Below are positions 19,470-63,419 of a stretch of 64,000 bases of DNA, piece by piece (the stretch's first letter is position 1; each line of letters starts with the position of its first letter). The notes below the pieces were generated by a model. That model saw only the letters and a program-made list of their open reading frames with translations, had not been told where the DNA came from and made no database searches. Where the stretch lies: NCBI RefSeq assembly GCF_963921235.1, contig NC_086124.1, forward strand, positions 11,222,001 through 11,286,000, written 5' to 3'. The translations under genes were made by a program, and so were the position numbers. This DNA is from Mobula hypostoma (taxonomy: Eukaryota).

Positions 19470-20260
19470 AGAACACACTCAAATACAGGAGGATCTCAAG
19501 TCAGGCGGCATCTATAGAAATGAATAAACAGTCGACATTTTGGGCAGTGACCCTTCATCAGGACTGGAAAGGAAGGAGGAAGATGCCAGAATAAAAAAAA
19601 AGGCGTGGGGGGGGGGAAATGGAGGATAAACTAGAAGGTGATAGGTAAAGCCAGGTGGGTGGGAAAGGCAAAGCGCTGGAGAAGAAGGAATCTGACAGGA
19701 GAGGAGAGTGGACCAGAGGAGAAAGGGGAAAAGGAGGAGGGGGACACCAGGGTGAGGTAACAGGCAGGTGAGGAGAAGGGTTAAGAAGCCAGCGTGGGCA
19801 ATTGAAGAAAAGGGAAGGAGGAGGGTTAAAAAAAAGAGAAAAAAATACCATAAGAAGAAATAGATACTCATGCCATCAGGTTGGAGGCTACCTAGACGGA
19901 ATATGATGTGTTGCTCCTCGACCCTGAAAGTGGCATCATCTTGGCACAAGAGGAGGCCAGAGACCGACATGTCGGAATGGGAATTGGGAATAAGAATTAA
20001 AATGGTTGACAATGAGGTAGTTGTGCTTTTGATGGATGGAGTGGAGGTGCCCGACGAAGCAGTCCCCCAATGTATGTCAGGGCTCACCAATGTAGAGGAG
20101 GCCACATTGGGAGCACTGGATAGATGACCCCACAGATGCCCTACTTGGAAAGACTGTTTGGGCCCTGAATGGAGGTGAGGGAGAAAGTGAATGGGCAGGC
20201 GTAGCATTTATCTCACTTGCAGGGATACGTACCATAAGGGAGATTAGTGGGACTGGACAC
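19470..20260 (-). mobile_element. Penelope-like element: GIY-YIG endonuclease remnant plus 3' terminal region
   Basis: Peptides GPKQSFQV, CSQCGLLYIGE (YIG motif) and SHSDMSVSGLLLCQDDATFRVEEQHIIFRLGSLQPDGM. Hammerhead remnant at 19528-19567. Confidence 0.85.
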
Positions 20261-22148
20261 CACAATCCAGTTCTTTGATTTGGTAGACATTAATTGGGTC
20301 AAGGGGATTTTTATCTGAGGCCCAAATAAATAAGGTATTTTCAGTGTCAAGGAGAAGGTAATTTATTTTTTTAAATGACACCCAAATGTTTGGATAAGAC
20401 ACACTGTCCCCAGGTCAAGACAATGTTCTGTTTCTGTAGACATCCACACATTAATTTTGTCTATAAAACAGGAAAGTCATAAAAATTACTCTATACAGTA
20501 ACCACACCTCTGCAGTATGTAATGAATATTATTGATGAGGGCCAATAAATGTGAGCATTTATTTATTGTCTTCCTCAGCCTGGTTACAATGGTACAGAAT
20601 CAGGCTGTGCCACACTCAAGGGCTGATTTTGATACCTGTGGAAGTCACACTGTTTAATAGAGTGTTGTTACACCAATATCAATAGAAGCAATTGTCAATT
20701 TCCAAAATCCATCATGGGCACTTGACTCCATAGTATCCAGGACATCTTCAAGGAGTGATGCCTCTAAGAGGTGGCATCCATCATTAAGAACCCCATCACC
20801 CAGGACACATCCTTTGCTCATTGCTACCATCAGGGAAGAGGTACAGGAGCCTGAATGCACACACTCAGTGACTCAGGAACAGCTTCTTTTCCTCTGTCAT
20901 CAGATCTCTGAATGGACACTGAACCCATGAACACTACCTCACTACTTTTTTATTTCCATTTTTGCACTACTATTTAATTCAACCATTTTATTTACACACC
21001 CATATAAAACAGAACATTATAAATATATACATATACAAATACTGTGATTCACAATTCTATTATGTATTGCACTGTACTGTTGCTGCAAAAACACATTTCA
21101 TGACATATGCCAGTGATATTAAACCTGATTCTAATTCTAAAATGACTATGTAAGTAGCCTCCTATGATGATACTGACAATCTACATTCCTAAGAGACAAT
21201 GGCGTCTGATTACTCAAAGTTGAAAGTAGAACTATTATCAAAGCACATGCACGTCACCATAAGCAACCCTGAGATCCATTTTCTTGTGGGCATACTCAAT
21301 GAATCCAGAATAGAATAATAACCGTAATAGAATCAATGAAAGCCTTCACCAACTTGGACATTCAACCGGAGTGCGGAAGACAATAAACTGTACAAATACA
21401 GAAAGAAATAAAGAAATAATCAATAAATAAACAAACAAGCAAGCAATAGGGAAGGAAATGGCAGGAAAGTTGCATGTAAATGGTTTCTTCCCCCATCAAG
21501 ACTGGTTCTTGTTTGAATTTACTAATATTTATGGGGGCTTGTTCATATGTGCACGTGTAGATGAGGTGGGTATTTGTAGCCTATGAAATGACAGGATACA
21601 CAGGCAGTGGAAACCAGGACTGCACATTGGCCTGCCTTCCCTTGGGTAAATGATCCCAAGTTATGTCATGCATAATGCTATTATAGAGTTAATTACATCT
21701 TAAGTGTGGTGGTGTTTTAATCTGCATGATTCACCCATCTCAAATATACAGTATACAAGCATATTTACCTGTACCACTCCCATTGTGTAGACAGACTAGT
21801 CAACTATCTGCTCAATTCCCAAAGATTGTTACTGAATTCATGTTGATATTTTATCACCGACCTCAGCTGATGTTGCTGTAACATCTCCTCTGGTATTATT
21901 ATAAGTGCTCATAACAATTCTCGCTTGGGTATCTACACTTAGAATATTCACAAAAGGTAACTTGATAACCTGTGTGTGGGAGGGAGAAAAAGGTGCTTGT
22001 TTTTGCTGTTGTTTGTTGCATTCTGTGTGGTTCTGCCAAGCATCGTGGGTATGCCATGTTGGCAGAGGAACGTGTGACGATGCTTGCAGGGTTCCCCCAG
22101 CAGGGTGTTGGTTGTGAATGTAAAGAGTCTGAATCCGATGTGTCCCCT

Positions 22149-32509: not shown

Positions 32510-35500
32510 TACTGCCACTAATGCCATTGGCACTTAAGGCAGTAATGAAAGTCCTTCATCTGTCTGTTGGTAGGTTGTGACAACGCATTTCTGCAGTTAG
32601 TTCTGCTAGCTTGCCGGTGTTGTACAGTTTGTACATCCCAAAGAAAAAACACTTGACAGTGTTCAGGGCTTCCTTCATCGTGCCAGTAGCTTTCTCTTGG
32701 TTTTCACTATTGTCAGTCATGCAAGTCCCAGGTAGAGTCTCCAGATTACAGATTATTGTTATGGGGGACTTCAACATGCAGGTAGACTGGAGGAATCAGG
32801 TTGGTACTGGACCCCAAGAAAGGGAGTTTGTGGAGTCCCTCCGAGATGGATTCTTAGAACAGCTTATACTGGAGCCTACCAGAGAGAACGCAATTCTAGA
32901 TTTTGTGTTGTGCTATGAACCGGATTTGATCAGGGACCTCGAGGTAAAGGAGCCATTAGGAGGTAGTGACCATAATATGATAAGTTTTAATCTACAATTT
33001 GAGAGGGAGAAGGGAAACTCGGAAGTGTCAGTATTACAGTTGAACAAAGGGAACTGTGGTGCTATGAGGGAAGGGCTGGCCAAAGTTCGATGGAACAATA
33101 CCCTAGCAGGGATGACAGTGGAACAGCAATGGCAAATGTTTCTGGGAATAATGCGGAAGGTGCAGGATCAGTTCGTTCCAAAGAGGAAGAAAGATTCTAA
33201 GGGGAGTAAGGGGAGGCCGTGGCTGACAACGGAAGTAGTGGACAATATAAAAATGAAAGAGAAGAAGTATAACATAGCAAAGACGAGTGGGAAGCCGGAG
33301 GATTGGCAAACTTTTAAAGAGCAACAGAAGGTAACTAAAAAGGCAATACGCGGAGAAAAAATGAGGTATGAAGGTAAACTAGCCAAGAATATAAAGGAGG
33401 ATAGTAAAAACTTCTTTAGGTATGTGAAAAGGAAAAAAATAGTTAAGACCAAAATTGGGCCCCTGAAGACAGAGGCGGGTGAATTTATTATGGGGAACAA
33501 GGAAATGGCAGATGAGTTGAACAGGTACTTTGGATCTGTCTTCACTAGGGAAAACACAAACAATCTCCCAGATGTAATAGCGGCCAAAGGACCTAGGGTA
33601 ATGGATGAATTGAAGGAAATTTATATTAGGCAGGAAATGGTGTTGGATAGGCTGTTGGGTCTGAAGGCTGATAAGTCCCCGGGACCTGATGGTCTGCATC
33701 CCAGGGTACTTAAGGAGGTGGCTTTAGAAATCGTGGATGCATTGGTAATCATTTTCCAATGTTCTAGATTCAGGATCAGTTTCTGTGGATTGGAGGGTGG
33801 CTAATGTTGTCCCTCTCCTCAAGAAGGGAGGAAGAGAGGAAACAGGGAATTATAGACCGGTTAGCCTGACGTCGGTGGTGGGAAAGATGCTGGAGTCAAT
33901 TATAAAAGATGAAATTATGACACATCTGGATAGTAGTAACAGGATTGGTCCGAGTCAGCATGGATTTACGAAGGGGAAATTGTGCTTGACTAATCTTCTG
34001 GAATTTTTTGAGGATGTAACTATGAAAATGGACAAGAGAGAGCCAGTGGATGTGGTGTACTTGGACTTTCAGAAAGCCTTTGATAAAGTCCCACATAGGA
34101 GATTAGTGGGCAAAATTATGGCACATGGTATTGGGGGCAGAGTACTGACATGGATTGAAAATTGGCTGGCTGACAGAAAACAAAGAGTAGCGATTAACGG
34201 GTCCCTTTCGGAATGGCAGGCGGTGACCAGTGGGGTACTGCAGGGTTCAGTAGTGGGACCGCAGCTGTTTACAATATATATTAACGATTTAGATGAGGGA
34301 ATTAAAAGGAACATTAGCAAATTTGCCGATGACACAAAGCTGGGTGGCAGTGAGAAATGTGAGGAGGATGTTATGAGAATGCAGGGTGACTTGGACAGGC
34401 TGGGTGAGTGGGCAGATGCATGGCAGAAGCAGTTTAATGTGGATAAATGTGACGTTATCCACTTTGGTGGTAAGAACAGGAAGGCAGATTATTATCTAAA
34501 TGGAGTCAAGTTAGGAAAAGGGGAAGCACAACAAGATCTAGGTGTTCTTGTACATCAGTCACTGAAAACAAGCATGCAAGTACAGCAGGCAGTGAAGAAA
34601 GCTAATGGCATGCTGGTCTTCATAACAAGGGGAATTGAGTATAAGAGCAAAGAGGTCCTTCTGCAGCTGTACAGGGCCCTGGTGAGACCACACCTGGAGT
34701 ACTCTGTGCAGTTTTGGTCTCCAAATTTGAGGAAGGACATTCTTCCTATTGAGGGAGTGCAGCGTAGGTTCACAAGATTAATTCCCGGGATGGCGGGACT
34801 GTCATATGTCGAAAGATTGGAGCGACTGGGCTTGTACACGCTGGAATTTAGAAGGCTGAGAGGGGATCTTATTGAAACATATAAGATTATTAAGGGATTG
34901 GACATGCTGCAGGCAGGAAGCATGTTCCCGCTGATGGGTGAGTCCAGAACCAGAGGCCACAGTTTAAGAATTAGGGGTAGGCCATTTAGAACGGAGTTGA
35001 GGAAAAACTTTTTCACCCAGAGAGTGGTGGATATATGGAATCCTTTGCCCCAGAAGGCTGTGGAGGCCAAGTCTCTGGATGCTTTCAAAAAAGAGATGGA
35101 TAGAGCTCTTAAAGATAGTGGAATCAAAAGTTATGGGGATAGGGCAGGAACTGGATACTGATTGTGGATGATCAGCCATGATCACAGTGAATGGCGGTGC
35201 TGGCTCGAAGGGCCGAATGGCCTACTCCTGCACCTATTGTCTATTGTCTACAGTCGCACTCAGAGGTAGAAGGATTCCTCACTGTAGTTTCCGTAACAAT
35301 TTTTTTTGACCTGTCAGAGTTGTTAGCCCTGAGATGAACCCCTGAACCTGTTGGACCAGCGGACCACTCCTAGTCTGGCCTCTACCCTTTGACCTGTTTA
35401 GCATGGGTGACCCTACCAAGAGCCAAAGCACAAGACCCTGACTCCAGCCAGCATAGCTCTCCGGGTCACTGAAGCACGCAAGTTTCCAAACCCTATGGCA

Positions 35501-37145: not shown

Positions 37146-37852
37146 CTAACAAATTAGATTGATAGGTAAACAAACGAACTGTACATTATGTACCACTTCG
37201 TATCAATGGGTGATCATGGTCTTTGACCATGATTATTCTTGATAAAATGTTCTTCTTCTGGGCAGAGTCTTTACAAGATGGGTGACACCAGCCATTATCA
37301 ATACTCTTCAGAGATTGTCTCCCAGGCATCAGTGGTCGCATAACCAGGACTTGTGATATGCACCAGCTGTTCATACCACCTCCTCCCATGGCTTCATGTG
37401 GCCCTGGTCAGGGGGCTAAACAGATGGTACACCTTGCCCAAGGATGACCAGTAGGCTAGCAGAGGGAAGGAGCACCTTACACCTCCTTTGGTAGAGACGT
37501 ATCTCCACCCTGACACCCAAACAAGAATAGAGATTGTTTTAACACTGCACAATGAGAAGTGGTTAATTAGGTTTTGAGTTAATGATCTTTAGAAGAGTGA
37601 TCATAATATTATAGTAATTTACATTAGAAAGTACTGAAAACTAAATGCTGGAAGAACTCAGCCAGTCAAGCAGTATCTATGGAAGAAAATGGACAGTCTC
37701 TATTTCATGCCAAGACATTTCATCTGGACTTGATCCAAAACATCAGCTGTCCATTACCCTTCACAAATGCTACCTCCAGCATTTTGGTGGTTGCTCAAGA
37801 TTCCAGCAGCTGCAGTTTCTTGTGTCTTCATTTTAAATAAAATGATTTAGCA

Positions 37853-41034: not shown

Positions 41035-41925
41035 AGACCATAACACATAGGAACAGAATTAGAGGCCATTTGGTCCATCAAGCCCACTCCGTCCATTTCA
41101 TCATGGCTAATCCATTTCCTTCTCAGCCCCAGTCTCTTGCCTTCTCCCTGTATCCCTTCATGCCCTGAGGAATCAGGAATCTATCAACCTCTGCCTTAAA
41201 TATACCCAATGACTTGGCCTCCTCACGGATTCACCACTCTCTGGCTAAAGAAATGTCCGTTCTAAATTCTGTTTCCATAACAATTTTGTTGTACCATTCA
41301 TGGTTATTAGCCTGAGCTGAACCCCTGGACCTGCAAGACGGGTGCAGGACTCTCAGACTGGTGTCTACCCTTTAACCTGTTAGGCACAGGTGGCCCTACC
41401 AAGAGCCAAACTATAAAGCCCCGACTCCAGCCAACATAGCTCTCCAGGTCATTGAGGCACGCAAACCTCCAAACCCACGACAAGGTTGGGGTCCTCTTGG
41501 AGTCTGTTCTAAATCGTCAGGACGTCCCTCTATTCTGAGGCTGTGTCCTCTGACTCTTAAGACTCTCCCATCATAGGAAACATCCTCTCCACATCCACTC
41601 TATTGTGGCCTTTCAATATTTGATAGGCTTCAATGAGATGCCCTTCCATTTTTCTGAATTTCAGTGAGTACAGTCCCAGAGACATCAAACACTCCTCACA
41701 TGATAACCCTTTCAATCCTGGAATCATTTTCGTGAACCTCTTTTGAACCCTCTCCAGTGCCTGCACATCCTTTCTAAGATGCCCAAAACTGCTCACAATA
41801 CTCCAAGTGAGGCCTCACCAGTGCCTTATAAAGTCTCAACGTTATACTCTTGCTTTTATATTCTAGCCCTCTCAGAATGATTGCTAACATTGCATTTGCC
41901 TTCCTCACCACAGACTCAACCTTTG
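41035..41925 (-). mobile_element. CR1 3' fragment interrupted by a family B RTE piece (41268-41501)
   Basis: ERVQKRFTKMIPG ORF. 13-bp TSD gtc(c/t)gttctaaat at 41255-41267 and 41502-41514. Confidence 0.8.
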
Positions 41926-42178
41926 GGTTAGGAAAATAAGGAATATGGGGAATGGCACAGACATAAAGATTCAGTCATGATTGTATCTGTTCTATTCAGT
42001 TAGAGTGATTTCGCTCTTTTTTAAGTTGAAGTGAAGGGTTTGATAAGGAGATTCAAAGGTCACAACAAGATGAGGTTGGTGGAACTAAAAGTAGAAAAGG
42101 CATTAGATCAGGATGAAAACTGACATAGAAACTTCAAAGAATCCTTAGCACACATTAAGGCATCCAACTACACTCAGA

Positions 42179-42406
42179 CAACAGGAATTCTGCAGATGCT
42201 GGAAATTCAAGCAACACACATCAAAGTTGCTGGTGAACGCAGCAGGCCAGGCAGCATCTATAGGAAGAGGCGCAGTCGACGTTTCAGGCCGAGACCCTTC
42301 GTCAGGACTAACTGACGAAGGGTCTCGGCCTGAAACGTCGACTGCGCCTCTTCCTATAGATGCTGCCTGGCCTGCTGCGTTCACCAGCAACTTTGATGTG
42401 TGTTGC
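42179..42406. mobile_element. Palindromic Penelope-derived mini-element with 14-bp TSD
   Basis: Perfect 95-bp inverted arms (42211-42305 and 42312-42406) with a 6-nt spacer. caactacactcaga at 42165-42178 and 42406-42419. Confidence 0.9.
42273..42310 (-). ncRNA. Minimal type I hammerhead ribozyme, intact core
   Basis: UAGUC-CUGACGA-AGG GUCUCGG CCU-GAAA-CG-UC/GACUG. Stems I and II pair, and stem III is reduced to palindromic ACGU as in PLE minimal hammerheads. Confidence 0.75.
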
Positions 42407-43169
42407 AACTACACTCAGAATAGTTCTGATAAAAGACAATCAATTTGAATATCAAGCCTGTTCTCTTTATCTCATCTGCAGTGAGTTTTACTGCACAAAC
42501 AAAAATATTCAGTAATAGAACAGTTCCCTGTTTGATTTCTCACACGAAAATTAGTATTTTCCAGCTGTGTTGTACTTCATCGATTTCATTCTGAAGTGCA
42601 GTGTCTCTGGAGTGAGATTTAAACTACAAAGGCAGGCTTTTTTTCAAATTTCATTACAAATTATTCCAAAAGTTTTATGTAAAAGTACACTGAATGCACC
42701 AATAGCAATGCTTGGATACTTCACAACTTTTCACTCTGAAGACACTCAACTGTGACGACAGCCATGACGGAATCAAATATCCTACTCTCCGATGAGATTT
42801 TAACCATATTAGCTAGGGCAACCGGGGAGGAGCTGAAAATATAATTCAACATCAAACCTTTTGTTTGTAAAGGTGGGGAGGGAATGTAAAACAAAGAAGA
42901 GGAGACTTTTACATTGCAGGGTCTCCAATTACACCAAAAACTTCCTTGTAACTACTTTGTAAACATTGTTTTTTTTGTTTTGGAGACACAAGAGACTTCA
43001 GAGATTGGAAACAACAGAAGGAAGACAGCGGGGCCGGTCAGCCTCTGTGGCAGCAGAAGAATGGTCCATACTGCACAACAGAAGCTAGGATTGTTGGTGG
43101 AGGGGTCAGCAGGGACAATGAGGTGTGAATGAATCCTGAAAGGGAAGGAGAGCCTGCAGATGTTGGAAA

Positions 43170-43800
43170 TCTTCCTCTTCTTCTTTGAGTTTTTACGGCA
43201 TTTAGCATCCACATTGTTGCATTGCTGCCATCTTCAGGATTTATTGTCCTTCAATGTCCTTTCAGCTTAAAGCCGTCCTTCCAGTCCCATCGCCCTTAAA
43301 TAACTAAACAACCCCTGATCACTCTCCCCACATTCCAATAAACCTTTAACACTGTTCTCTACCAGTCCTATTTTGCGTAATTGTTGTAACATTTGTTGCC
43401 TTTCCTATGCAAATTTCCGGCAGGAAATAAGGATATGCTCTACTGTTTCAGTCTCCTGACACAGATCGCAAAAACCTGTTGGATGCTTATTTATGATGGC
43501 CAGTGCCATTAAGGTTGCTGTGCCCAATTCTCAGTCTACTTATAATTACTTGCTCCTTCCGCTTTACTCCCCTACTTCTTCCCATATCTACTCTGTTCTG
43601 AATTGAATGTAAATGTCCTCCTTTTATTGCTCTATCCCAATGCTGCTGCCACTGTTGATTTATCCTTCTCCACACTATGCTCTTCCCCTCTGATTTTGAT
43701 AGTTTAATATTGACCTCTACAGATCCTTTTTTGACTGCTGCTTTTGCCAGCCTATCTGCTGTCTCATTTCCCACAACACCCGAATGTGCTGGAACCCACA
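43170..43800 (-). mobile_element. I-group (Nimb-like) LINE 3' end with RNase H and CCHC knuckle
   Basis: WVPAHSGVVGNETADRLAK (RNase H), RLRIGHS, CDLCQETETVEHILISC, tail ...aaaaactcaaagaagaag. Confidence 0.8.
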
Positions 43801-43959
43801 TGCTGGAAATCCAAGGCAAAACGGGCACAAAAATGCTGGAGGAACTCAGCAGGCCAGACAGCATCTATGGAGAAGAGTGAACAGTCGACGTTTCGGGCCG
43901 AGACCCTTCCTTCATCAGGAGAGGCCTGCTCTTGGTAGAGTTTGTAGTTTATCCTCCAT

Positions 43960-44300
43960 AAATCGTTGCGTGGCGGGAATCGGCGCGACTCCCTCACCTC
44001 GGCTCCGGAGCGGGCGCTCACTCCCGCGTGACCCGGTGAACTTGCCCTCGGAGCCGCGCGGGAGCGCGCTGACCCCGGAAGGAGACGCTTCTCCTTCCTG
44101 CCTTCCTTTCCCTCCCGCTGTCGGTGGCGGTGGCTGTGGGTTCGCTCTTGTCCGGTCTCGCCTCCCCGCCGTCTCTGTCCCCACCCCAGCCGCTCCGTCC
44201 CACGGGCGTGACTGATCGGACGGTGAGTGCGAGAGGGCAATTTAACAGATCAATTTAAAAAACCGGGGGAACTCGGCGCGTCAGGCCGCGTCCGCGGTGT
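43960..44300 (+). promoter_or_regulatory. ZNF593: CpG island with probable non-coding exon 1 of ZNF593 (donor GTGAGT at 44223)
   Basis: CpG-dense, with E2F-like TGGCGGGAA and ETS CCGGAA. Strong donor cg|gtgagt. The next exon starts with an acceptor 14 nt before the ATG, so an upstream exon is required. Confidence 0.65.
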
Positions 44301-46640
44301 GGTGGTGGTGGGGAGATGGACAGTCGACGCTTTGGGTCGAGACCCTTTATCAGGACAATCGGCCCGAACTAGCGCCTGTCCATTTCCCTCCACAGAGGCT
44401 GCCTGACTTGATTCGGTTCCTCCCGCATCTGGTGTGCGTTGCTGTAGATTCCCAGCCTCCGCAGTCTCTCTTGTGTCCGGTCAGGCAGCCTCTGTGGAAG
44501 GAAATGGGTGGTCAGAAACCCTTCATTTGGTCTGAGAGAGGGGAGGTGGTCAGTGTAGGGAGGTGAGGAGGACGGGGAGAGTTGGAATAGCCTCAGAAAC
44601 TGGGAGGGGAAGGATGGGTGGAGGCGACAGAGTGTTGCAGATGGTGGAATCTGATGAGAAAGTACGGGGGAGCGTGGCATCAATGTAGGGAGGGGGTTGG
44701 AAAACCAAGTGGGTTCCTCTGAATGGAATTTAGGCTTTGTCAGATTCCCTATTTGGCCAAGTGTAGGTGATGATGGAGTGGGTGGCTGGGAAAGGTGCAG
44801 GGTGAGGGGGGCTAGGATAGTTGTAGGAGTTGGTAGGTTAGGTGGAGAGGCAGAGGGGGAACATTTTAACGAGTGTTCATGCTGTCCAGCCTCTGTCCCC
44901 ATCTCCACTTGCTCCTTCTCCATCTGCCTATCACCCCTCATTGCCTGGATCCACTTGTCATTTCCGAACCCTTGCTCCATCCCTGCCTTCCACCTTTTAT
45001 GCCCGCCATCTCCCCTTTACCATTCAATCCTGACAAAGGGTCTCAGCCCGAAACATCGACTGTCCGTTTCTGTCAGTAGATGCTGCCTGACCCGCTCGAG
45101 TTCCTCCATGTTTTGATAGTTGCTCCAGATTCCCACATCTGCAGTTTCATGTGTCTCGAAAGGCAACTGAATAACGAGAAGCTGCACATTTCATTATGAA
45201 CTGCATCAATGCAACTGTGCATAAAATGGGAGGGAGAATCGTTCCTGCCTTAACCTGCTTAATCCTGCTAAGGCCTGCAATGGACCATTTTCTAGCAGAA
45301 GATTCACACTTTTGGGAGTTAAAGAATGTTTTTGCTGATCTTATAACTTTCATGTCTCTAGGACAGGGTCTCCACCCAAAAACATTGACCATTCCTGTCT
45401 CCTCAGATGTTGCCCGACCAGCTAAGTTCCTCCAGCAGTTTATTTTCTGCTGCATATTCGAGCAGCTGTGGTAATTTACCTCATCTGGACCACCACTTCT
45501 GCATTGTCAGTGGTTTGATCTACTTTAAAGCCATTGACCAAAGATTTAAAGATTCATGATCAAAGTATGTGTGCAGTCCTGAGATTCATCTTCCCAAGAT
45601 GGCCACAAAACAAAACCACCATGGAACGCATTTCAAACACCCAACGAGCAAAAAAAAAAGGAACAAATTGTGCAAGCGTTGAAAAAATGAGTGAAAAACA
45701 CACAGAACATAAAACATCAGACCGCAGAGTCCTTGAAACAGTCTGGGAATGTTCGGCTTACCTTAGTTCAGGTCTGTTTTTCATTGTCTGCAGGGGATAG
45801 AGCCAGTCGTCTGATCAAAATCGCATAAAATAGCAATCAAAAAGGAGTAAGCAGTAACGTGCAGCCCTGCCAAGGGGTCTCAGCCCAAAACGTCAACTGT
45901 TTTTTTTTCCCCATAGATGCTGCCTGGCCAGCTTAGTTCTTCCAGCATTTTGTGTGTGTTGCTTGGATTTCCTGCCTCTGCGGGGTTTCTCTTGTTTGTA
46001 ACATGACTTGCATTATCTGCGGAGTCTAATCCACAAACTGCGTCGATTAAACCTTGCCCGAGACTCTGGCAGCCGTGAGCGAGAGGGAGAGAGGGATTGC
46101 TCAAGCGTAGGCACCTCCTTCTGGCAGGACAGAGAGAGAGAGAGATCAGTCACACGCAGGGTGATGGCACTGAATACTTGCTGGCCTTCCGCTCTTGTCC
46201 ACATTGATTTCAGTCTTGCTCGACACTCTAATCAGCAAGTAGGAGCGAAATACTGCAGTTAATAGTAAGTCAAAATAAAAACAGGAAATGCTGGGAATAC
46301 TTTGCAGATCAGGCAGCACCTGTGGAGAGAGAGGGGAAAAAAACCCTAAAGATTATCAGCTTAATGAGTAGAAAAAGTTAAAAATAAAACATGCTTTTAC
46401 ATTTCAAAGGGAGGAGGGTAGTGAAAACAAAATATCTGATGCGAGGTTGGAAGCTGAGTGACGGGGTGGTGGTGGCTGAGAGGAAATGTTTAGTGCCTGC
46501 TGAATCACTGCTAATTGGAGGAGACAAATAGTGGGAAAGATGGAGAGATTTAAAAGATATATCTCTGTCTGTGGGTAGCAGGGTGGAGATACGTCTCTAC
46601 CAAAGGAGGTGTAAGGCATTCCTTTCCTCTGCTAGCCTGC

Positions 46641-49164: not shown

Positions 49165-50610
49165 GTAAGTAGCTGTCATTTGTGAACAATATGTTCTCTA
49201 CTTTTATGTGCACCCTACCAACGATGTACATCTGTGTCCTGCTGGAATGGTACTGTACTCATTTGCAGTGGAGGGTCTGCTGTGGACAGTTCCATTCTGC
49301 TCAGGTCTGTGCTTAGAATTTTAACTGGTTTTACAGAAGACTGAGTTGTTACTCACCCGTAACTCGGTCACATGGAGTAGGTTACATGGTTGGCACGACA
49401 TTGTGGGCCGAAGGGCCTGTAATGTGTTCTAGCTATCTGTGTTCTATGAGCCTGCTTGTAAAGACACTGATGATATGCCCTGGTAGTTTTTCTATAATTA
49501 TAAATCAAATATATCTACAACCTTTAACTTAAAAAGCCTTTTCGGACCTTAAAATAATTTGGGTGGCAAGGTGGAGATCCTTCCCTCTGCTAGCCTGCAG
49601 GTTACCTTTCGGCAAGGTGTAGCACTTATTTAGCATCCTCCCCACCCCCACTGATCAAGTTCACATGAAGCTATGGTCGTATGAGCAGCTGGTGCATGTC
49701 ACAAGTCCTGGTGATGCGACCACTAACGGCAGGCAGACAATCCCTGAAGAGTATTGATAAAATCCAGGGTTACCTGTCTTGTAAAGACACTGCCCAGAAG
49801 AAGACAATGGCAAACCACTTCTGTAGAAGGATTTGCCCAGAACAATTGCATTCATGGAAAGACCTTAATTGTCTACGTCATTCGACACAGGGCACAACAA
49901 ACAAAAAACTAATGAATGGCTTTAAAGTCAATTTCTCCATAAATTGTTTTGATCTCAAGTTCAGAAAAGAAGCTGACAAAGCAAAACAACTAAGAACAGT
50001 GAAAATGAAAAAGTTTTTTTAATATACTACTAAATCTCATATATTCTGTGCACACTTGGAAAATGGTGATAAGCTTTTACACACAAGTTTGATGTTCTCA
50101 ATCACCTGGCTAACTTTATATTGAGCTTTCCGCTTGCTGCCTCAGACAACGACTGTAGGGAGATGAGAGCAGAGGTGTGTTAGTTACAGCATAATGGCCA
50201 AAGCAGAAGTTTCTGAAGAGATAATTGGCAAAAAGTTTGATTGGTGAATGGAATAAAATAATGTTGTATCTCCCTTTATTTTCTGATCCTTACGGTTCTA
50301 CCAGGAGTCAAGAATGGCAAGGAATCCTAATTCTAAGATTTCAGTTTATTCTAGAGTACAAACAAAATACAAACACTAAGCAAACTAAATAAAGAGCTGA
50401 GAAACGATGCTAAGGGGAATTAACATTAATGGGTGTAAGACAATGTAATAAAAGATGGTGCTTCTGAAAATTCTATCACTTTTATAGATAAGATGAGGGA
50501 AATTCCTTGGATAAAGATGAATTAATTAATAGGCTACATAATTAAAACAATTACAAGATGTGGGTGATGTGCTAATACTTCCCCAATGAAAAATATGTAG
50601 GGTGATAAAC

Positions 50611-50745
50611 CCGACAAAATCTGCAGAAGCTGGAAATCCAAAGCAACCCACACAAAATGCTGGAGGATCTCAGCAGGCCAGGCAGCATCTTTGGAAAAGA
50701 GTAGACAGTCGACATTTCAGGCCGAGACCCTTCACCAGGACATAA
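50611..50745 (-). mobile_element. Single-arm Penelope-derived mini-insertion with TSD, in a ZNF593 intron
   Basis: ggtgataaac at 50601-50610 and 50746-50755. Ends just outside a hammerhead motif with core CUGGUGA. Confidence 0.8.
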
Positions 50746-50944
50746 GGTGATAAACTGTTAGTTTAGCTGCTATACTGCTTTCTGTCAGTGAGTGTGAAAA
50801 GTACTTGAGTTTGTTAAAAAGTACAAATCTCACAGGAAAGTGTAATTTAAAAATAACAGTGGTTTCCAACAATATTAAAAAAAAATTATGGACGTCCACA
50901 TGGGTTTAATCACTTCAGTAACTTTTCTTTTGTTCCATTTGCAG

Positions 50945-54228: not shown

Positions 54229-56231
54229 TAATTCACGGATTTAACCTTTCAATGAGATATGTTTTGAACTACTTCCAAAGACTAACTGTTGATTTAGCTG
54301 ACCTTTGTATTGTTAAAATTGTAATACAAGTTCAATTGTCATTCAGTCATACATGAAAACCCATGATTCCAGCCAAATGAAACAGTGTTACTCTGGGGCC
54401 CAGGTGCAAAACACAGTACCAACAGTCATACACAGCACATATGAAAGCAAGCACATATAAGAGATCAGTAAAATACAGTCACACTAAAAAATACAGTCCA
54501 AGTCCCTGTGTCCATGAATGTTGCAGCAGTCTGCAGTCGAACACAATATTGCTTGTCTTCCGCTGAGCAAACACTGGGGGGCAGCACTGACTCCAACGCC
54601 TCTCTCCTTGTGCGGCTTGAGGCTTTGTCCTCACTACAACCAAGACCACGCAGCTCCCCCACCACCAATAAATCAGCGAATCAGACTTGCAGCATTCAGC
54701 ATTAACAATATCCAACAGGGTCTTATGATCGCAAGAAAAGCGACTAAGACGATCGCTCGCTGTTAGGGTGCACACTGACTCCTCTGAACCCTCTCCGATG
54801 CAGGCAGCAGGGCGAGCCGCACTAAGACCAGCTCCTTCACTTTCTCTGCTAACAAGCAACTCGCTGATGGGGTAGTCCTGCAGTACTCTAAATTCTTAAT
54901 GTCCAGCAGGGTCTTGCAATCATAACAAATACATTTAAAAAAGACAATAGCCCCTTTGGTTGGCCCTCTAGAAGCCACTGCGACCAAATGCGACACCATC
55001 TTATTGGAAAAAATAGACCCAAAGCCAGTAGCTTGAAGTTAGGCTGTCTTGCTTCATCTGCTGGCTGTGGTATCTCTTGTGTTAACTGATTAACTCCAGT
55101 CTACATTATTTTGGTGATCAAGATCCATGCTTGATTGCATTTGCACTGCCAGATATCAACTAATAGCGGAAGATAGGAGTTCAGCTCTTGGGTCTGCACG
55201 ACAGCCAGCTAGGAAGGAGATAGAAGGAAATTACTATTTCATACCGACTCAGTTATAGTGTATCGTGATATTTGAATGATGCTAGGATAGAAGTGTAAAG
55301 GCAAGCATGAGGAATTTTAAAGGATGTATGTTTGCAGAGTAACAACTGTGGGCAGTACAGTGATGAGACAGCAGACTAGAATCTGGACAAGCAAAAAAAA
55401 AATCGGGGAATGTGTGGAATTGAGCAGCATCTGTACAGGGGGTGGGGAGGTGGGGAATTGTTTGTCCCTTGGGTCAACACCCTGCATCAGGTTCATGGAA
55501 AACATGAACAAATGAAGACTGTTTAGAGCAGGGGCTTACAATCTCGGGTCCACGGACCCCTCGGTTGATGGAGACAACAAACTGAAGATTGTAATATATA
55601 GGAGCAGGGCTAGGCCATTTGGCCCATCAAGTCTGCTCCAGCATTTCATCATGGCCGATCCTTTTCCCTCTCAGCCCCAATCTCCTGCCATCTCCCCGTA
55701 TCCGTTCTTGCCCCGACTAATCAAGGATCTTATCAACCTCAGCCTTAAATATACCCCAATGCCTTGGCCTTCACAGCCATCTGTGGTAACCAATTCCACA
55801 GATTCACCACTCTTTGGCTAAAGAAATTCCTCCTTGTCTCTGTTCTAAATGGACATCCTCTCCACATCCACTCTATCGAGGCCTTTCATGGTTGAAGACA
55901 CTTAATGGGGGTGGGGGGGGGAGGAAGAGGAGGATAAAATTCAATGAGCTGGAGATACCTGACCCAGGAGACTGAAAGCAAAGAGCTGAGAACGGAGACC
56001 CTCCGATGAAGGCCAACGAGGTTCACCGGGCCATGCCTTTATTCATTGGAACTTTGGAGAATGGGGCGGGGGGGCAGTGCAACCCTATAGAAATGTTTGA
56101 AATTATGAGTGTAGGATAGGAACAATCCTCCCTGGGGTAGAGGAGTTTAATTTGGGTTGAGAGGGGAAACTTTCTCTCAGTATGTGGAATGATCTGGGAG
56201 ATTGCTGGGCGGCGTGGTTAGAAGGGCCTGG

Positions 56232-56356
56232 GAAGGGTCTCGGCCTGAAACGTCGACTGCACCTCTTCCTACAGATGCTGCCTGGCCTGCTGCGTTCACC
56301 AGCAACTTTGATGTGTGTTGCTTGAATTTCCAGCATCTGCAGAATTCCTGTTGTTT
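56232..56356 (+). mobile_element. Penelope-derived terminal segment, near-identical to the 42.2 kb arm
   Basis: gaagggtctcggcctgaaacgtcgactgc...ttgaatttccagcatctgcagaattcctgttg, truncated inside the hammerhead. Confidence 0.85.
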
Positions 56357-58453
56357 ACTGTAGTCAGAATCAGGTTTAATATCACCAGCATATGCGTGAA
56401 ATTTGTTTACTTTCCAGAAGCAGTACAATGCAATACATAATTAAAAAACCATGAATTACAGTAAATATATGTAAATAGTTAAGTAGTGCAAAAAAAAGGA
56501 AATAAAAAAGTGAGGTAGTGTTCGTGGGTTCAGTGTCCATTCAGAGTGGAAGAAGCTGTTTCTGAATCGAGTGTGTGCTTTCATGTTCCTGTACCTCCTC
56601 CCTGATGGTAGCAGTGAGAAGAGGCTTAGACTTGGATTGTATTTGTGCTATGACCATAAATGAGTTAATTGTCGTTTTTTCAGAATTTCTTGTGCTTTGA
56701 TAATGATTCTTTTTCATGATAGCTAAGTTTCATAAGTCAGTGTGTATATTCAGCGACAGGAGGCTACAAAGCTGATGGGTGCAACATGAAGCAATATTCA
56801 GGAGGTTTCTGCATCTCTGCCGAACTCATGATTAATAGGACCAGTTACATCAAAACATTAAAAAGCTCAGGATGACAAACAGTAGGAAAAAGGCATGAAA
56901 TAACTTTCCAAGAATTACAGGAAGCCATTCAGATATCTAATTTCTGACTCCCTATTGCATATTTCAGGTTCCACAAATCAAGCTTCTGTCTTCTGCCTCT
57001 GAATTCTATTACAGAGTATCTGGATGGCTGACATAAGCTGTGGCTGCCAAATGTTTGAATTTTTTTTGTAGTATTTAAAGTCGACAATTAACTTATTTGT
57101 AAGTTGTCCTCAAGGCTCTGTAAATCACAGGATAGGAGAGTTTTAAATGGGAATAATAGGTTTGTTATTTTAAACAATCCACTTTCTGTAATTTAAATAT
57201 AGACATACTGTCAATTATTTATTCAGTTGCTAAAATAGATTCTGGCACTTCATTTCTCCATTATTTGACATACATAGAATTGTGAAACTATAAAAAAGTT
57301 ATAAGAATATTGTTAGATTTACATTATTTCTATATATTTTGCCCCTTTTGTCCTTTCCTAGTTCCATTGTCAATCCCTCCCTCTGTTCTAAGGCAGATGT
57401 TGACAACGAATTATGGAGAGAGAGGCAAAGTTAAAATATTAACGTTTCCTCTCGCCTTGACCTCCTGATTTTTTTTGTGTTACCTTATATTTCTGGCATT
57501 GCTTTTTTAAAATCAGTAATTTCAGACCAAGGTTCCTTAGATCCGACATTGAGCACAAATGGATTATTCGTGTACGCTCTGGTGTGAGCCTTCTCTTGTC
57601 ATTTGGTGTCAAGATGGCGCAGGAATTTTGTCCTGGGCTGAATTGTAAGCAAGATTTTACTCCTAAAATCTCATTTAGTGCATGCCACTCAGAGTTGGAG
57701 CCTCAACTTTATGTTAGCAAGACGCCACCATATCAGGTTACGATCAGATCAGCTCATGAACTATCCAAATTTGTGTGAATTGGGTTTGCAGAAAGATAGA
57801 GAGAGGTTGGTAGAGAAAAGGAACTATTGTACTGGTTGGTGAGAAGCAGAAAGATATTGGGCAGGCCAATCTGAATGTATTTATATTCACGTGAAGTTCC
57901 AGTCGATAACTAAAGTATGCATGCCCATTGAATTCCTTGTCTCCAGCAGGGTGCACAATCACGAGATGACGAGCTCAAATAGAGTCTGCTTATTTATACA
58001 AGACTTCATAGATTGCTTTTGGAGCTTTCTATAAATATTATTGCAGCCCATGAGTTGAAATGACAAAATTTAAAAGGGGTGAGAGCTTTAAAGTAACCGA
58101 TATTACATATACTACTCTTCTGGTAGAGGGAAAGAAAACACTGATTCAATGCATTTTCAACTTTAAAAATTTAAGCAAGTCACCAATTTTTAAAATTCTC
58201 TGCACTCTTACCAGAGATGCTGATTTTGCCTTTGCTGAACTAACAGATTCAGTCATACAGCATAGAAAAAGGCCCTTCAGCCTATCTTCTCAATGCTGAC
58301 CTGATCTGCCTAGTCTCATCCACCTGCACCAGACAATATGCCTTTAAATCTCTCCCATTCATGTACCTATTCAAACTTCTCTTAGATGTTACATCTGAAC
58401 CCACATCGACATCTTCTGCTGGCAGCTCATGCCACACTCATACCACCCTCTAG

Positions 58454-58533: not shown

Positions 58534-59901
58534 CAGGTTCCCCTCAAATTTACCTATGCAAGCAAAGTAACATCCATTTACTAACTTTCATCAGAAATAC
58601 TATCTGACAATTCTTAATGAACAATTGTTGTAGCTCCTTTAGGATCATCTCCTGACTTAACTGCAATTTTCCTGGGCCGTACACACTTGGATCAAGTGGT
58701 CTCCACACATCTCTGCGCGCGTGTGTGCACACACACGGGTTAATTATTTAGAACTGAGGTGTGTACAAATTTCTTCTTTCATGGGGTAGTGATTCTCTGG
58801 AATTGTCCACCCCGAGGGTACAGAAGGCCAGATCATTCAAAATATTAAATGTGCGGACAGATAAAGATTGAAGAACTGGGGTTCACAGACTTAAGAGAAA
58901 ATCTGCAGATACTGGAAGTCTGAGCAATACACACAAGATGCTGGAGGAACTCAGCAAGCCAGGCAGCATCTATGGAAAAGAATACAGTCGACGTTTCGGG
59001 CCGAGACCCTGCAGCAGAACTGGAGAAAAAAACATCTAATGAAATGCATTGTGAGTGTCAAATCAGATCAGTAAGGATTGTGCTGGGCATCCCGCAAGTG
59101 TCAACATGCTTCCAGCACCAACGTAGCAAGCCCGCACCTCACTAACCCTATAACCCTTTCGTCTTTGGAATGTGAGAGGAAACCCGAGCACCCTGTGGAA
59201 ACCCATGCAGTCACAGGGAGAACATACAAACTCCTTACAAATAGTGGTGGGAATTGAACCCTGATCTTACAGCCGCCACAGTAGAACATTGTGCCAACCG
59301 CCACACATACCATGCCTGGGGAATCGCAAGTAATCAGTGCTGCCTTTTAAAGCCCTTAAGTTTGGTCCGCTGTGTCTACTCACCTGCCTTATTGCTTTGA
59401 TTCGCCATCAGTGAATTTTCCAAAGTAGACTTTGTTTGCAGAACAAAGAGGGTGTGGTGTAATCACTCTTCCCAGCAAGATTTAATGAAACTTTGTAACT
59501 CCAATGTCACCTCCTCTATATAAGTGTATTTTTCTTTGTTTTCAATCAATGTGCATGTGTGTAAGCAATAGGGTTCAAAGGGCCACAGCACACAACATGG
59601 TTAGTTAGTCCAACTCTGCGTTCAGATGCATGCTTTATCTCGAGTTGGTGTGGTACACCCAAAGGAATCATTATTAAGGCTTATTTATTTATTGAGATAC
59701 AGTGTGGAATAGGTCTTTTCAGCCCTTCAAGCTGTGCCACCCAGCAACCCCTGATTTAACCCTAGCCTAATCACGGGACAATTTAAAATGACCAATTAAC
59801 CTACCAATCTTTGGACTGTGGGAGGAAACTTTACACAGATCCCACATCTTCTTGATCTTTCTTCCCATCTCAGTGGTTTCTCTTCCCTTAATGGTTAATA
59901 A

Positions 59902-60785: not shown

Positions 60786-61694
60786 TGCTTGCTTTCTGCA
60801 AGGGAGGCACATCATTTACATTAAAGATTGACAAAATTCTGAACACCTTCTCAGGCAGATAAAGGCGTCCTTCCTCCATGGTGGTTCCTATTAGTAAGTC
60901 ACCGCGATTCGCAGATATTACTGTGCCCTTCGCAGCAACAAAGCCATGGTTATACACCATACATCTGCTTTCAGGGTCTCAGCATCCACAGATGCTGCCT
61001 GACTCTCTTGAGGTTCTTCCTCAGTCTGCTTTGCAATTAAATGAGTACAACTTATCTTTGTTCATTGTCAAGCCATGCTTTATTTTGTTTATGCCACTAG
61101 ACACAAGTGTTCATTTGTTATATGCCATGTTGTATGATGTGGGCAATCATGCTCTTTCCATGACCATGACTGTTCTTGGCTAACTTTTCTACAGAAGTGA
61201 GTTGCCGTTATCTCCTTCTGGGCAGTGCCTTTACAATACGTGTGACCCCAGCCATTATCAATACTCATCAGAGATTGTCTGCCTGGCATCAGTGTTGCAT
61301 AACCAGGACTTGTGATCTGCACCGGCTGCTCATATGACCAGGTGCTGTTCCCCTGGCTTCATGTGACCCTGATCAGGGGGCTAAGCAGGTGCTACTCCTT
61401 GCCCAAAGGTGACCTGCAGGCTAGCGGAGGGAAGGAGCACCTTACACCTCCTTTGGTAGAGACGTACCTCCAACCCGCCACAAGGGAAAGAAGCTGTTCC
61501 TAAATCGTTGAGTGTGGATCTTTAGGCTCCTGTACCTCCTCCCTGATGGTGGTAACCAAAAGAGGGCTTGTCCCACCCCCATGGTCTTTGGTGATGGATG
61601 CTGCCTTCTTGCGGGACCATATCTTGAAGGTACCCTTAGAAGGTCATGCCCACGAAAACCTATTATTTGCAAACATAAAGCAAGTTAGAATAAT

Positions 61695-61904
61695 ACACAC
61701 AAAATGCTGGAGAAACTCAGCAGGCCAGGCAGCATCTATGGAAAAGAATGCTGTGGATGTTTCGAGCGAAGGTCGAGGATTTTGGCCAGAAATGTCGACT
61801 GTACTTTTTACCATAGATGCTGCCTGGCCTGCTGAGTTCCTCCAGCATTTTCTGTGTGTGTGCTGTATGGATTTCCAGCATCTGCAGATTTGCTCTTGTT
61901 TGCC
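61695..61904. mobile_element. Second TSD-flanked palindromic Penelope-derived mini-element (older)
   Basis: Imperfect inverted arms. 12-bp TSD agttagaataat at 61683-61694 and 61905-61916. Confidence 0.8.
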
Positions 61905-62149
61905 AGTTAGAATAATGTAAGGTTTCCTTTTCCATCAGTATTTTCTCTCTTTTTTTTAAAAGCATTAGCGATTCCTGACTCCCCTGGGACGGTGTGATGC
62001 GCTCCCTCCACACTGTCTCGCTTCAGAAATCAGAGTTCTTTCAAAAACGGGACGAACTCCAAAACTCAGCGGCTATTTTGAAAATGTAATGCGACAAAGT
62101 AATACACACAATCACATTCGCAACCCACTGAACGCAAAGTATCTCAAAG

Positions 62150-63100: not shown

Positions 63101-63230
63101 ACACGGAGTCTTTCTCTGTTAAGTCATAGTCACAAGAGTCTCACGGCACAAAAAGGCCCTTCGGCTCATCTAGATCTAACCAACACACACAAAACGCTAG
63201 CGGAACTCGGCAGGCCAGGAAATGAATAAG

Positions 63231-63268
63231 CAGTCGACGTTTCGGGTCGAGACCCTTCCTCAGAACTG
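63231..63268 (-). ncRNA. Minimal type I hammerhead ribozyme, intact core, within a PLE fragment (about 63180-63365)
   Basis: CAGUU-CUGAGGA-A-GGGU CUCG ACCC-GAAA-CG-UC/GACUG, with a 5-bp stem I and 4-bp stem II. Confidence 0.7.
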
Positions 63269-63419
63269 AGAAGGGTGGGTAGCTGTAAGGTGATAGAAGA
63301 AGGCAGGTGGGTGGGGAAAAGATCAAGGGCTGGAGGAGAAAGAATCTGACGGGAGAGGAGAGTGCACCTGGACCATGCCCCTCAAGCCCATGTACCTATC
63401 TAAATTTCTCTACAAAATG

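What the first reader, a model, noticed from the sequence alone, without database searches (positions are those of the whole stretch)
42165..42419. Perfect 95-bp palindromic mini-element folding back exactly at the ribozyme, with a 14-bp TSD
Seen: the arms are exact reverse complements, the spacer is gactaa, and the turn lies at the 5' strand of hammerhead stem I. The TSD caactacactcaga shows a single recent insertion. An older TSD-flanked analogue sits at 61695-61904, with degenerate ones at about 37644-37830 and 44316-44478. Inference: either a discrete palindromic non-autonomous family exists, or fold-back priming recurs at the ribozyme during PLE integration. A transcript of either strand would form long dsRNA (ADAR/Dicer substrate) complementary to the whole family, and the DNA could extrude a cruciform.
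Basis: partly seen in the sequence, partly recalled or inferred. Interest (0 to 1): 0.75.

Follow-up and report, generated by a model that had tools for sequence, protein, structure and literature searches.

The report
Mini fold-back Penelope retrotransposon insertion
The perfect 95-bp palindrome is real, but it is one recent, dead insertion of the tail end of a very abundant Penelope-like retrotransposon of a ray genome, laid down head-to-head in the two-armed shape already described for this class, so it is ordinary.

Summary
Observation confirmed. The arms 42211-42305 and 42312-42406 are 100% complementary, with a 6-nt spacer and a 14-bp target duplication. Contigs from two related species join 42164 directly to 42406. 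That is a precise empty site, so this is a single lineage-specific insertion.

Each arm is the roughly 100-nt 3' module of an endonuclease-bearing Penelope-like element (PLE). It carries the class's minimal hammerhead motif. Only the left arm has the 32-nt "tail".

This matches the published PLE architecture: inverted 5'-truncated copies, a one-sided 30-40 bp tail and a TSD of variable length. It also fits in-vitro data showing that a PLE protein cuts and extends both target strands from two RT start sites.

The turn is not specific to the ribozyme. About ten short linear copies in the window have their 5' ends at the same place, the probable pLTR 5' boundary. The four fold-backs in the window have different junctions and ages, so they formed repeatedly and are not copies of one palindromic master.

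The dsRNA, ADAR and cruciform ideas remain untested. The RNA-like run shows no contig on the unique flanks.

This scan has already met and followed up the same kind of fold-back several times elsewhere in this genome.

The parts
42165..42178 (.). Left copy of the 14-bp target-site duplication
   Evidence: Perfect direct repeat. Organisms B and C hold a single copy at the empty site (X5 record 18 and X9 record 25).
42179..42210 (-). 32-nt PLE 'tail' (model 158-193), present on the left arm only. Its outer end is the distal RT start site.
   Evidence: 100% identical to 56322-56353 in the linear sibling copy. nhmmer model positions 158-193. Published as a one-sided 30-40 bp tail.
42211..42305 (-). 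Left arm: PLE 3' module (model 61-157) in antisense orientation, including the minimal hammerhead core at 42278-42305
42306..42311 (-). Spacer. On the minus strand it reads TTAGTC, the helix I 5' strand (model 55-60). It is continuous with the tail-bearing arm, which is therefore 6 nt longer.
   Evidence: Other copies have ..AGTC directly before the CUGA box.
42312..42405 (+). Right arm: the same module in sense orientation (model 61-157), without a tail. It ends at the proximal RT start site (..GTGTGTTG). Minimal hammerhead core at 42312-42339.
   Evidence: The 3' terminus is the same as in tailless linear copies 8731, 9750, 19472 and 63174.
42406..42419 (.). Right copy of the target-site duplication (first base ambiguous with the arm)
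56231..56357 (+). Closest relative in the window: a linear (not folded) tail-bearing copy of the same young subfamily
   Evidence: 88/90 identical to the arm and 32/32 identical in the tail; alignment
61683..61916 (.). Older fold-back of the same architecture (element 61695-61904), tail on the right arm only, 12-bp TSD
37643..37825 (.). Old, decayed fold-back. The tailless arm reaches model 53; the tail-bearing arm starts at about model 78.
44245..44476 (.). Old, decayed head-to-head pair (tailless arm to model 57, tail arm from model 74). Ambiguous because of an adjacent third copy at 44478-44537.
19472..20290 (-). Long copy of the same family: frameshifted GIY-YIG endonuclease remnant, about 300 nt of 3' UTR, then the hammerhead module. 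It links the module to a PLE ORF.

Best explanation
This is one retrotransposition event of an endonuclease-bearing Penelope-like element (PLE). It happened after the source species split from two related species. It deposited two head-to-head copies of only the element's last ~100-130 nt: pLTR-length cDNAs carrying the minimal hammerhead motif. Shown: the insertion, its empty site, the 13/14-bp staggered target duplication, the PLE identity of the module, the one-sided tail, and the two discrete 3' termini. Inferred: the PLE protein nicked both target strands 14 bp apart, and each 3'-OH primed its own cDNA. One cDNA started from the distal RT start site and so carries the tail (left arm). The other started from the proximal site about 32-36 nt upstream and so has no tail (right arm). 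Both cDNAs ran to, or to within 6 nt of, the 5' end of a short template, the pLTR 5' boundary just 5' of hammerhead helix I. One cDNA end was then continued on the other, by an end-to-end template jump or by repair, giving a perfect palindrome with a 6-nt spacer. The copy has no ORF and is dead. In a transcript, the 95-bp hairpin would out-compete the hammerhead fold.
For: Geometry. Empty site: X5 record 18 and X9 record 25 join 42164 to 42406 with flanks about 1.2% and about 4% diverged. In the source sample, X1 records 1 and 8 cross both junctions without a branch. PLE identity rests on three results. First, the motif CUGAnGA + extra nt + G10.1..C11.1 helix II + GAAA + palindromic 15.2-16.2 + UC, with a 4-5 bp helix I, fits the published min-HHR descriptor. 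[quoted passage not shown] Third, ray protein P0002 and its relatives carry RVT_1 followed by a C-terminal GIY-YIG domain above Pfam cut-offs. Architecture: an inverted 5'-truncated copy, a one-sided 30-40 bp tail and a variable TSD are published PLE features. The Anolis PLE protein cleaves and extends both strands and starts RT at two sites whose interval equals the tail. For dual priming: tailless arms of FB1 and FB2 end at model ~152-157, the same terminus as tailless linear copies 8731, 9750, 19472 and 63174. In 37643-37825 the longer, loop-continuous arm is the tailless one. The hot spot is not fold-back specific: about ten short linear copies have 5' ends at model 48-67. One example is 50607-50751, which has a 10-bp TSD.
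Against: No read or contig bridges the turn, so the exact spacer rests on the assembly alone. The discrimination between dual priming and snap-back rests on n=4 fold-backs, two of them badly decayed and one ambiguous. The published in-vitro work saw no strand difference in RT start site, so the strict one-tail-per-fold-back pattern is not explained. No full-length PLE ORF of this family lies in the window. Pfam does not recognise the decayed EN pieces in the window itself.
Confidence: 0.75

Rival explanations
1. Same PLE insertion, but made from a single cDNA. Synthesis started at the distal site (tail), reached the template 5' end, snapped back on itself with a 6-nt loop and copied itself for 95 nt. 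The end was then joined to the other side of the target. This is the self-priming proposed for PLEs in 2013.
For: The arms are 100% identical and the spacer is tiny and continuous with the tail-bearing arm. PMC3846280 interprets palindromes at inverted pLTR junctions as self-priming.
Against: The loop gactaa offers no terminal base pair to prime from. The second arm stops exactly at the discrete proximal 3' terminus used by independent linear copies, which self-copying does not predict. In 37643-37825 the arm continuous with the loop lacks the tail while the shorter arm has it, which is impossible for self-copying. Both target strands are extended by a PLE protein in vitro.
Confidence: 0.17
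2. A discrete palindromic non-autonomous element (~227 nt) that is itself transcribed and retrotransposed as a unit. All such palindromes would then be copies of one master.
For: Earlier scan notes list several 238-241-letter palindromes in this genome. A hairpin RNA ending in the tail could in principle be a template.
Against: The four fold-backs in the window differ in junction, spacer (6, 11, ~18, ~25 nt) and subfamily. The nearest relative of this copy is a linear one (56231-56357). Notes also list 104-bp-arm, 550-bp and 1-kb versions. The recurrent size follows from a shared 5' boundary and fixed RT start sites.
Confidence: 0.05
3. Assembly artefact: the palindrome was created by a chimeric or fold-back read and does not exist in the animal.
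For: No contig spans the turn. PLE tandem and inverted structures are known to trouble assemblies.
Against: Short-read contigs from the source sample cross both junctions, each showing an outward-pointing element 3' end next to the TSD. A precise 241-nt difference from the empty sites of two species fits an insertion. Three further examples of the same architecture lie in the same window.
Confidence: 0.02
4. A MITE or other DNA transposon with 95-bp terminal inverted repeats, moved by a transposase.
For: It is small, has terminal inverted repeats and is flanked by a direct repeat.
Against: The arms are the 3' end of a retroelement. The termini are asymmetric (32-nt tail on one side only). TSD length varies between copies (14, 12, 10 bp), unlike a transposase footprint. 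Linear one-armed copies with the same ends are commoner.
Confidence: 0.01

Closest known systems
[quoted passage not shown]
   Same: Head-to-head inverted arms inside one TSD. A 30-40 bp tail on one arm only. TSD of variable length. A min-HHR in the repeated terminal module. Family members carry RT plus a C-terminal GIY-YIG EN.
   Different: Here nothing lies between the arms: no ORF and no direct pLTR pair. The whole insert is therefore a 227-nt near-perfect palindrome. The family is from a ray and is extremely abundant.
PAc (Poseidon of Anolis carolinensis) in-vitro reaction (PMC11167929)
   Same: Two RT start sites whose interval equals the tail. Both target strands are cut and extended. 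A short RNA running from the hammerhead region to the start sites is a sufficient template. The start sites lie about 70-105 nt (here) or about 85-92 nt (PAc) downstream of the hammerhead cut site.
   Different: PAc showed no strand bias in start-site use, whereas here every fold-back has exactly one tail. PAc's preferred ATT target is not evident at this site. Nothing was tested biochemically here.
Minimal hammerhead of metazoan PLEs (Cervera and de la Pena 2014, PMC4209133)
   Same: No helix III. Palindromic 15.2-16.2. [quoted passage not shown] Short helix I. Located in the pLTR.
   Different: This young subfamily has U at 11.1 (a G-U wobble instead of the conserved G10.1-C11.1 pair). No Rfam model detects the motif. 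Cleavage is untested, and in a fold-back transcript the motif would be locked in a 95-bp duplex.
L1 twin priming (5' inversion)
   Same: The second target strand's 3'-OH is used as a second primer, giving an inverted segment inside one TSD.
   Different: In L1 the two segments are different, adjacent parts of one RNA, so no palindrome results. Here both arms copy the same stretch from two defined start sites.
Non-LTR retrozymes (tandem hammerhead repeats derived from pLTRs; bioRxiv 10.64898/2026.07.22.740005)
   Same: Non-coding, pLTR-derived, hammerhead-bearing, dependent on PLE machinery.
   Different: Retrozymes are head-to-tail tandems thought to move via circular RNA. This insert is a head-to-head pair with a TSD and no tandem.

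Membership tests
EN+ Penelope-like element (insertion product) | Family encodes an RT followed by a C-terminal GIY-YIG endonuclease | tested here: met
   P0002 (ray protein) matches by tblastn at 20260-19863, 14366-14187 and 10247-10083, each about 300 nt upstream of a hammerhead module. Its relatives P0067 and P0140 score RVT_1 then GIY-YIG above Pfam cut-offs. The palindromic copy itself has no ORF.
EN+ Penelope-like element (insertion product) | [quoted passage not shown] | tested here: met
   P0002 has VVY-CxxCxxC-G-LLYIGE. The window piece 20080-20289(-) keeps CSQCGLLYIGE. Definition taken from PMC8557442.
EN+ Penelope-like element (insertion product) | Inverted 5'-truncated copy or inverted pLTR adjacent head-to-head within one TSD | tested here: met
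   literature
EN+ Penelope-like element (insertion product) | Optional 30-40 bp tail at one end only, equal to the interval between two RT start sites | tested here: met
   A 32-nt tail on the left arm only. There are two 3'-terminus classes in the window, at model ~157 and ~188-193. Literature.
EN+ Penelope-like element (insertion product) | Target-site duplication of variable length | tested here: met
   14, 12 and 10 bp in three copies; empty site
Minimal hammerhead (min-HHR) of metazoan PLEs | Core CUGAnGA ... GAAA ... UH with no helix III and palindromic 15.2-16.2 | tested here: met
   42312-42339(+) and 42278-42305(-) match the core pattern; ACGU is palindromic (descriptor)
Minimal hammerhead (min-HHR) of metazoan PLEs | Conserved G10.1-C11.1 pair and an unpaired nucleotide 5' of helix II | tested here: inconclusive
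   The extra A is present. The family consensus has G-C, but this copy and its subfamily have G-U.
Minimal hammerhead (min-HHR) of metazoan PLEs | Self-cleavage (as a dimer) | not testable with these tools
   No assay was possible. Published PLE min-HHRs cleave poorly in vitro, and cleavage is dispensable for PAc insertion.
Rfam hammerhead families | Score at or above the family gathering threshold | tested here: not met
   There was no hammerhead hit at gathering score in the window, nor at E<=10 in 42100-42500. This is expected, because the models require helix III.
MITE / DNA transposon | Symmetric termini and a TSD of fixed length | tested here: not met
   The tail is one-sided. TSDs are 14, 12 and 10 bp.
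Non-LTR retrozyme | Head-to-tail tandem units, each with a hammerhead | tested here: not met
   The arms are head-to-head and there is no tandem at the locus.

The most novel reading that the evidence does not exclude
The ~140-nt unit from the base of hammerhead helix I to the RT start sites may be a discrete, separately transcribed minimal PLE template. In that reading it is a solo pLTR with its own initiator at the TTCAGTCC just 5' of helix I. A dimeric PLE particle would then use the distal start site on one nicked strand and the proximal one on the other. Mini-palindromes with exactly one tail would be a default product rather than an accident. The thousands of dated products with empty sites in ray genomes could then resolve the still-undefined PLE integration pathway.
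Probability: 0.2. Interest if true: 0.45.

Novelty: new member of a known kind. Interest (0 to 1): 0.2.

Why it matters
On its own it matters little. It is one more dead copy of a known retrotransposon class in its known two-armed shape, and the scan has met it repeatedly in this genome.

Three modest points of value remain:
- It shows recent PLE activity in this ray lineage: filled in the source species, and precisely empty in two relatives whose flanks are about 1% and 4% diverged.
- Young, perfect, TSD-flanked mini fold-backs are clean natural end-products of a transposition pathway whose late steps are still called undefined in the literature. A genome-wide tally of junctions and tail sidedness could separate dual-strand priming from self-priming.
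- Perfect 95-bp inverted repeats are potential hairpin-RNA sources and fragile DNA. None of that is shown here.

Tried and rejected
- **Rfam.** At gathering score on the whole window there was nothing. At E<=10 on 42100-42500 only sub-threshold miRNA-precursor look-alikes appeared, caused by the perfect hairpin, and no hammerhead. I read this as a limit of the models, not as absence of the min-HHR.
- **Direct naming of the endonuclease remnant in the window.** Pfam was blank or showed only weak zinc-finger noise. The ESM Atlas was blank and so was the word search on the 231-aa ORF. The exhaustive phmmer search returned mostly host gene models ending in the PLE peptide. Only P0002 was informative. 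Pfam on P0002 was blank and PDB was blank.
- **TSD search.** Nothing of 8 nt or more was found for 37643-37825 and 44245-44476.
- **Hammerhead self-cleavage as the cause of the turn: rejected.** The cut site (after GUC) lies 28 nt 3' of the start of the CUGA box, 34 nt from the longer arm's 5' end, and both arms contain the whole core.
- **Ribozyme-specific fold-back: rejected.** Linear copies end at the same place.
- **Other readings rejected.** The MITE, retrozyme and assembly-artefact readings are dealt with under the rival explanations.
- **Transcription and copy number.** The RNA-like run X11 showed family contigs but none on the unique flanks, so there is no evidence that this locus is transcribed. 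Summed contig depth is not a copy number and was not used as one.

Full report
**Observation.** The sequence at 42165-42419 is as described. The arms 42211-42305 and 42312-42406 are 95 nt and 100% complementary, with 6 nt between them. A perfect 14-nt direct repeat flanks the unit at 42165-42178 and 42406-42419. It is the strongest inverted repeat in the whole window. The unit is not fully symmetric. The 32 nt at 42179-42210 lie inside the duplication but outside the palindrome.

**What the arms are.** BLAST and an nhmmer model built from the window's own copies find about 25 pieces of one repeat family in the 64 kb. In model coordinates the landmarks are as follows:
- The CUGA box starts at position 61.
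- The hammerhead cut site follows position 88.
- One class of copies ends at about 157 (..GTGTGTTG).
- A second class ends at about 188-193.
- The extra 32-36 nt between these two ends is the piece found at 42179-42210. It is identical to 56322-56353 in the closest linear copy.

The spacer read on the minus strand is TTAGTC. Other copies have ..AGTC directly before the CUGA box, and it pairs with GACU after the cut site. The spacer is therefore element sequence, and the tail-bearing left arm is simply 6 nt longer than the right arm.

**Hammerhead.** The core has these features: CUGAnGA, one extra nucleotide, a helix II closed by G10.1-C11.1, GAAA, a palindromic 15.2-16.2 (ACGU), then UC and the cut site, with a 4-5 bp helix I and no helix III. 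This is the minimal hammerhead described for metazoan PLE pLTRs (PMC4209133).
- Both arms keep the core pattern. In the whole window only two other copies do.
- This young subfamily has U at 11.1, a G-U wobble.
- Rfam finds no hammerhead. That is expected for a motif without helix III.
- Cleavage is untested. Published PLE min-HHRs cleave poorly, and cleavage is dispensable for insertion in vitro.

**Link to a Penelope-like element.** Long copies continue upstream of the module through about 300 nt of CT-rich sequence into a frameshifted coding remnant. It reads ..YPCK....CSQCGLLYIGE....HFNS.. and ..EEQHIIFRLGSLQPDGM... Pfam, the Atlas and the word search did not name these pieces. An exhaustive phmmer search did find P0002, a 416-aa ray protein.
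- P0002 carries a YIDD box and VVY-CxxCxxC-G-LLYIGE. That is a GIY-YIG nuclease with two cysteines between GIY and YIG, the mark of PLE endonucleases (PMC8557442).
- By tblastn, P0002 hits the window three times, each about 300 nt upstream of a hammerhead module.
- Its relatives carry RVT_1 followed by a C-terminal GIY-YIG above Pfam cut-offs.

The module is therefore the 3' end of an EN+ PLE.

**A real, recent, single insertion.** Contigs of four public runs were laid on 41700-42900.
- In organism B, a 1134-nt contig (X5 record 18) joins 42164 directly to 42406.
- In organism C, a 435-nt contig (X9 record 25) makes the same join.
- Each is a precise empty site with one copy of the 14-bp target. 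Flank divergence is about 1.2% in B (9 of 765) and about 4% in C.
- In the source sample, one contig runs from unique left flank into the antisense tail (41909-42198). Another runs from the sense arm end into unique right flank (42382-42900).
- Neither contig branches at the junction, so there is no sign of an empty allele in that sample.
- Both junctions show an element 3' end pointing outward, which forces a head-to-head interior.
- The turn itself is not bridged by any contig. K-mer contigs cannot cross a perfect palindrome, so the exact spacer rests on the assembly.

**Comparison with the literature.** PLE insertions are described as highly 5'-truncated. They often have an inverted 5'-truncated copy or inverted pLTR adjacent head-to-head. 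They carry a 30-40 bp tail at one end only and a TSD of variable length (PMC8557442; PMC3846280). The 2013 paper already inferred self-priming from palindromes at inverted junctions. The 2024 in-vitro study of the Anolis PLE reports four relevant results (PMC11167929):
- The protein cleaves and extends both target strands.
- RT starts at two adjacent internal sites.
- The tail is the interval between those two sites.
- An RNA reaching only from the hammerhead region to the start sites is a sufficient template.

The unit at 42165-42419 is this architecture reduced to its minimum: two pLTR-length arms, one tail and one TSD.

**Is the turn special to the ribozyme?** No. Among the copies in the window, six extend upstream beyond the model. 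About ten short linear copies have their 5' ends at model 48-67, just 5' of helix I. One of them, 50607-50751, has a 10-bp TSD that fixes its 5' end at TTATGTC before the CUGA box. The turn therefore coincides with the common 5' boundary of the short unit, most simply the pLTR 5' boundary. The hammerhead cut site lies 28 nt 3' of the start of the CUGA box, and both arms contain the whole core, so self-cleavage did not define the end. I could not decide whether the boundary is a transcription start, an RT stop or a processing site. The consensus there, TTCAGTCC, fits an initiator.

**Mobilised family or repeated formation?** The window holds four head-to-head units.

| Unit | Coordinates | Arm 5' ends (model) | Arm identity | TSD |
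|---|---|---|---|---|
| FB1 | this one | 55 (tail arm) / 61 | 100% | 14 bp |
| FB2 | 61695-61904 | ~64-67 (tail arm) / 73 | 83% | 12 bp |
| FB3 | 44245-44476 | 57 (tailless arm) / 74 | ~72% | none found |
| FB4 | 37643-37825 | 53 (tailless arm) / ~78 | ~72% | none found |

The units belong to different subfamilies, and the nearest relative of FB1 is a linear copy. FB3 is ambiguous, because its tail arm matches an adjacent third copy better than it matches its own partner.

**Mechanism.** Two observations favour two independently target-primed cDNAs over a single cDNA snapping back.
- First, the tailless arms of FB1 and FB2 end at model ~152-157. Tailless linear copies (8731, 9750, 19472, 63174) use the same discrete terminus. 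A self-copied second arm has no reason to stop there.
- Second, in FB4 the arm continuous with the spacer lacks the tail while the shorter arm has it. A self-copy cannot produce that.

The joining step is inferred: one cDNA continued on the 3' end of the other, or repair. The sample is small, and I put dual priming at roughly 0.6 and snap-back at 0.2-0.3 of the mechanism question. What remains unexplained is that every fold-back carries exactly one tail, although the in-vitro work saw no strand bias.

As RNA, the 227-nt unit folds into a 95-bp perfect duplex (-212 kcal/mol). As single-stranded DNA it folds at -139 kcal/mol. A hairpin RNA or a cruciform is therefore physically plausible, and the hairpin would lock away both hammerheads. 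The RNA-like run of the source species has family contigs but none on the unique flanks. Transcription of this locus, editing and small RNAs are all untested.

**Earlier notes of this scan**. These report the same kind of fold-back at several other places in this genome, with 238-269, 550 and about 1000 letters. Follow-ups reached the same verdict. I reached mine from the tests above. Their size spread agrees with variable junctions. Their recurrent ~240-letter size agrees with a shared 5' boundary plus fixed start sites.

**Verdict.** The unit is a new member of a known kind, of low interest in itself. It has some value as a clean, dated product for working out PLE integration.

Noticed in passing
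window 8731-8856, 9750-9887, 19472-19618, 63174-63320 versus 43784-43923, 45348-45473, 45857-45998, 50607-50751, 56231-56357, 58891-59026: Four of five long copies (with 3' UTR or EN upstream) end at the proximal RT start site without a tail. All six short linear copies carry the tail. The numbers are small and it may be a subfamily or age effect.
   Followed up: partly
window 42306-42311 and model positions 49-60 in long copies (e.g. 19562-19600, minus strand): Just 5' of hammerhead helix I the family consensus reads as a polypyrimidine tract, then CAG, then TCCTGA. It also fits an initiator (TTCAGTCC). In Drosophila Penelope an intron ends at the 5' end of helix I (PMC4209133). Whether this marks a transcription start or a splice site here is open.
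   Followed up: no
window 41700-41945: Another extremely abundant repeat lies about 220 nt left of the insertion. Summed contig depth is 10^5-10^6 in three species. It was not identified.
   Followed up: no
window 32611-35161 (+) and 22499-23218 (+): An unrelated LINE has an AP-type endonuclease (Exo_endo_phos_2) and RVT_1. A second RVT_1 fragment lies at the other position.
   Followed up: partly
proteins P0013, P0014, P0004, P0039, P0041 (public gene models of rays and other animals): Host gene models (RecQ5-like, a GPCR, a divergent protein kinase, a chitinase-domain protein) contain or end in the PLE endonuclease C-terminal peptide. PLE fragments appear to be annotated as exons.
   Followed up: partly
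window 44478-44537 (-) next to 44359-44476 (+): A third, minus-oriented copy is cut off at model position 124 and abuts the tail end of a plus arm. It is 96% complementary to that arm over 28 nt. This could be a nested or tail-to-tail arrangement and was not resolved.
   Followed up: partly
window 56200-56235: The linear sibling copy starts with a stutter (GAAGGGCCTGG, then GAAGGGTCTCGGCCTG..) at its 5' junction. This may be template slippage or microhomology at the joining step.
   Followed up: no
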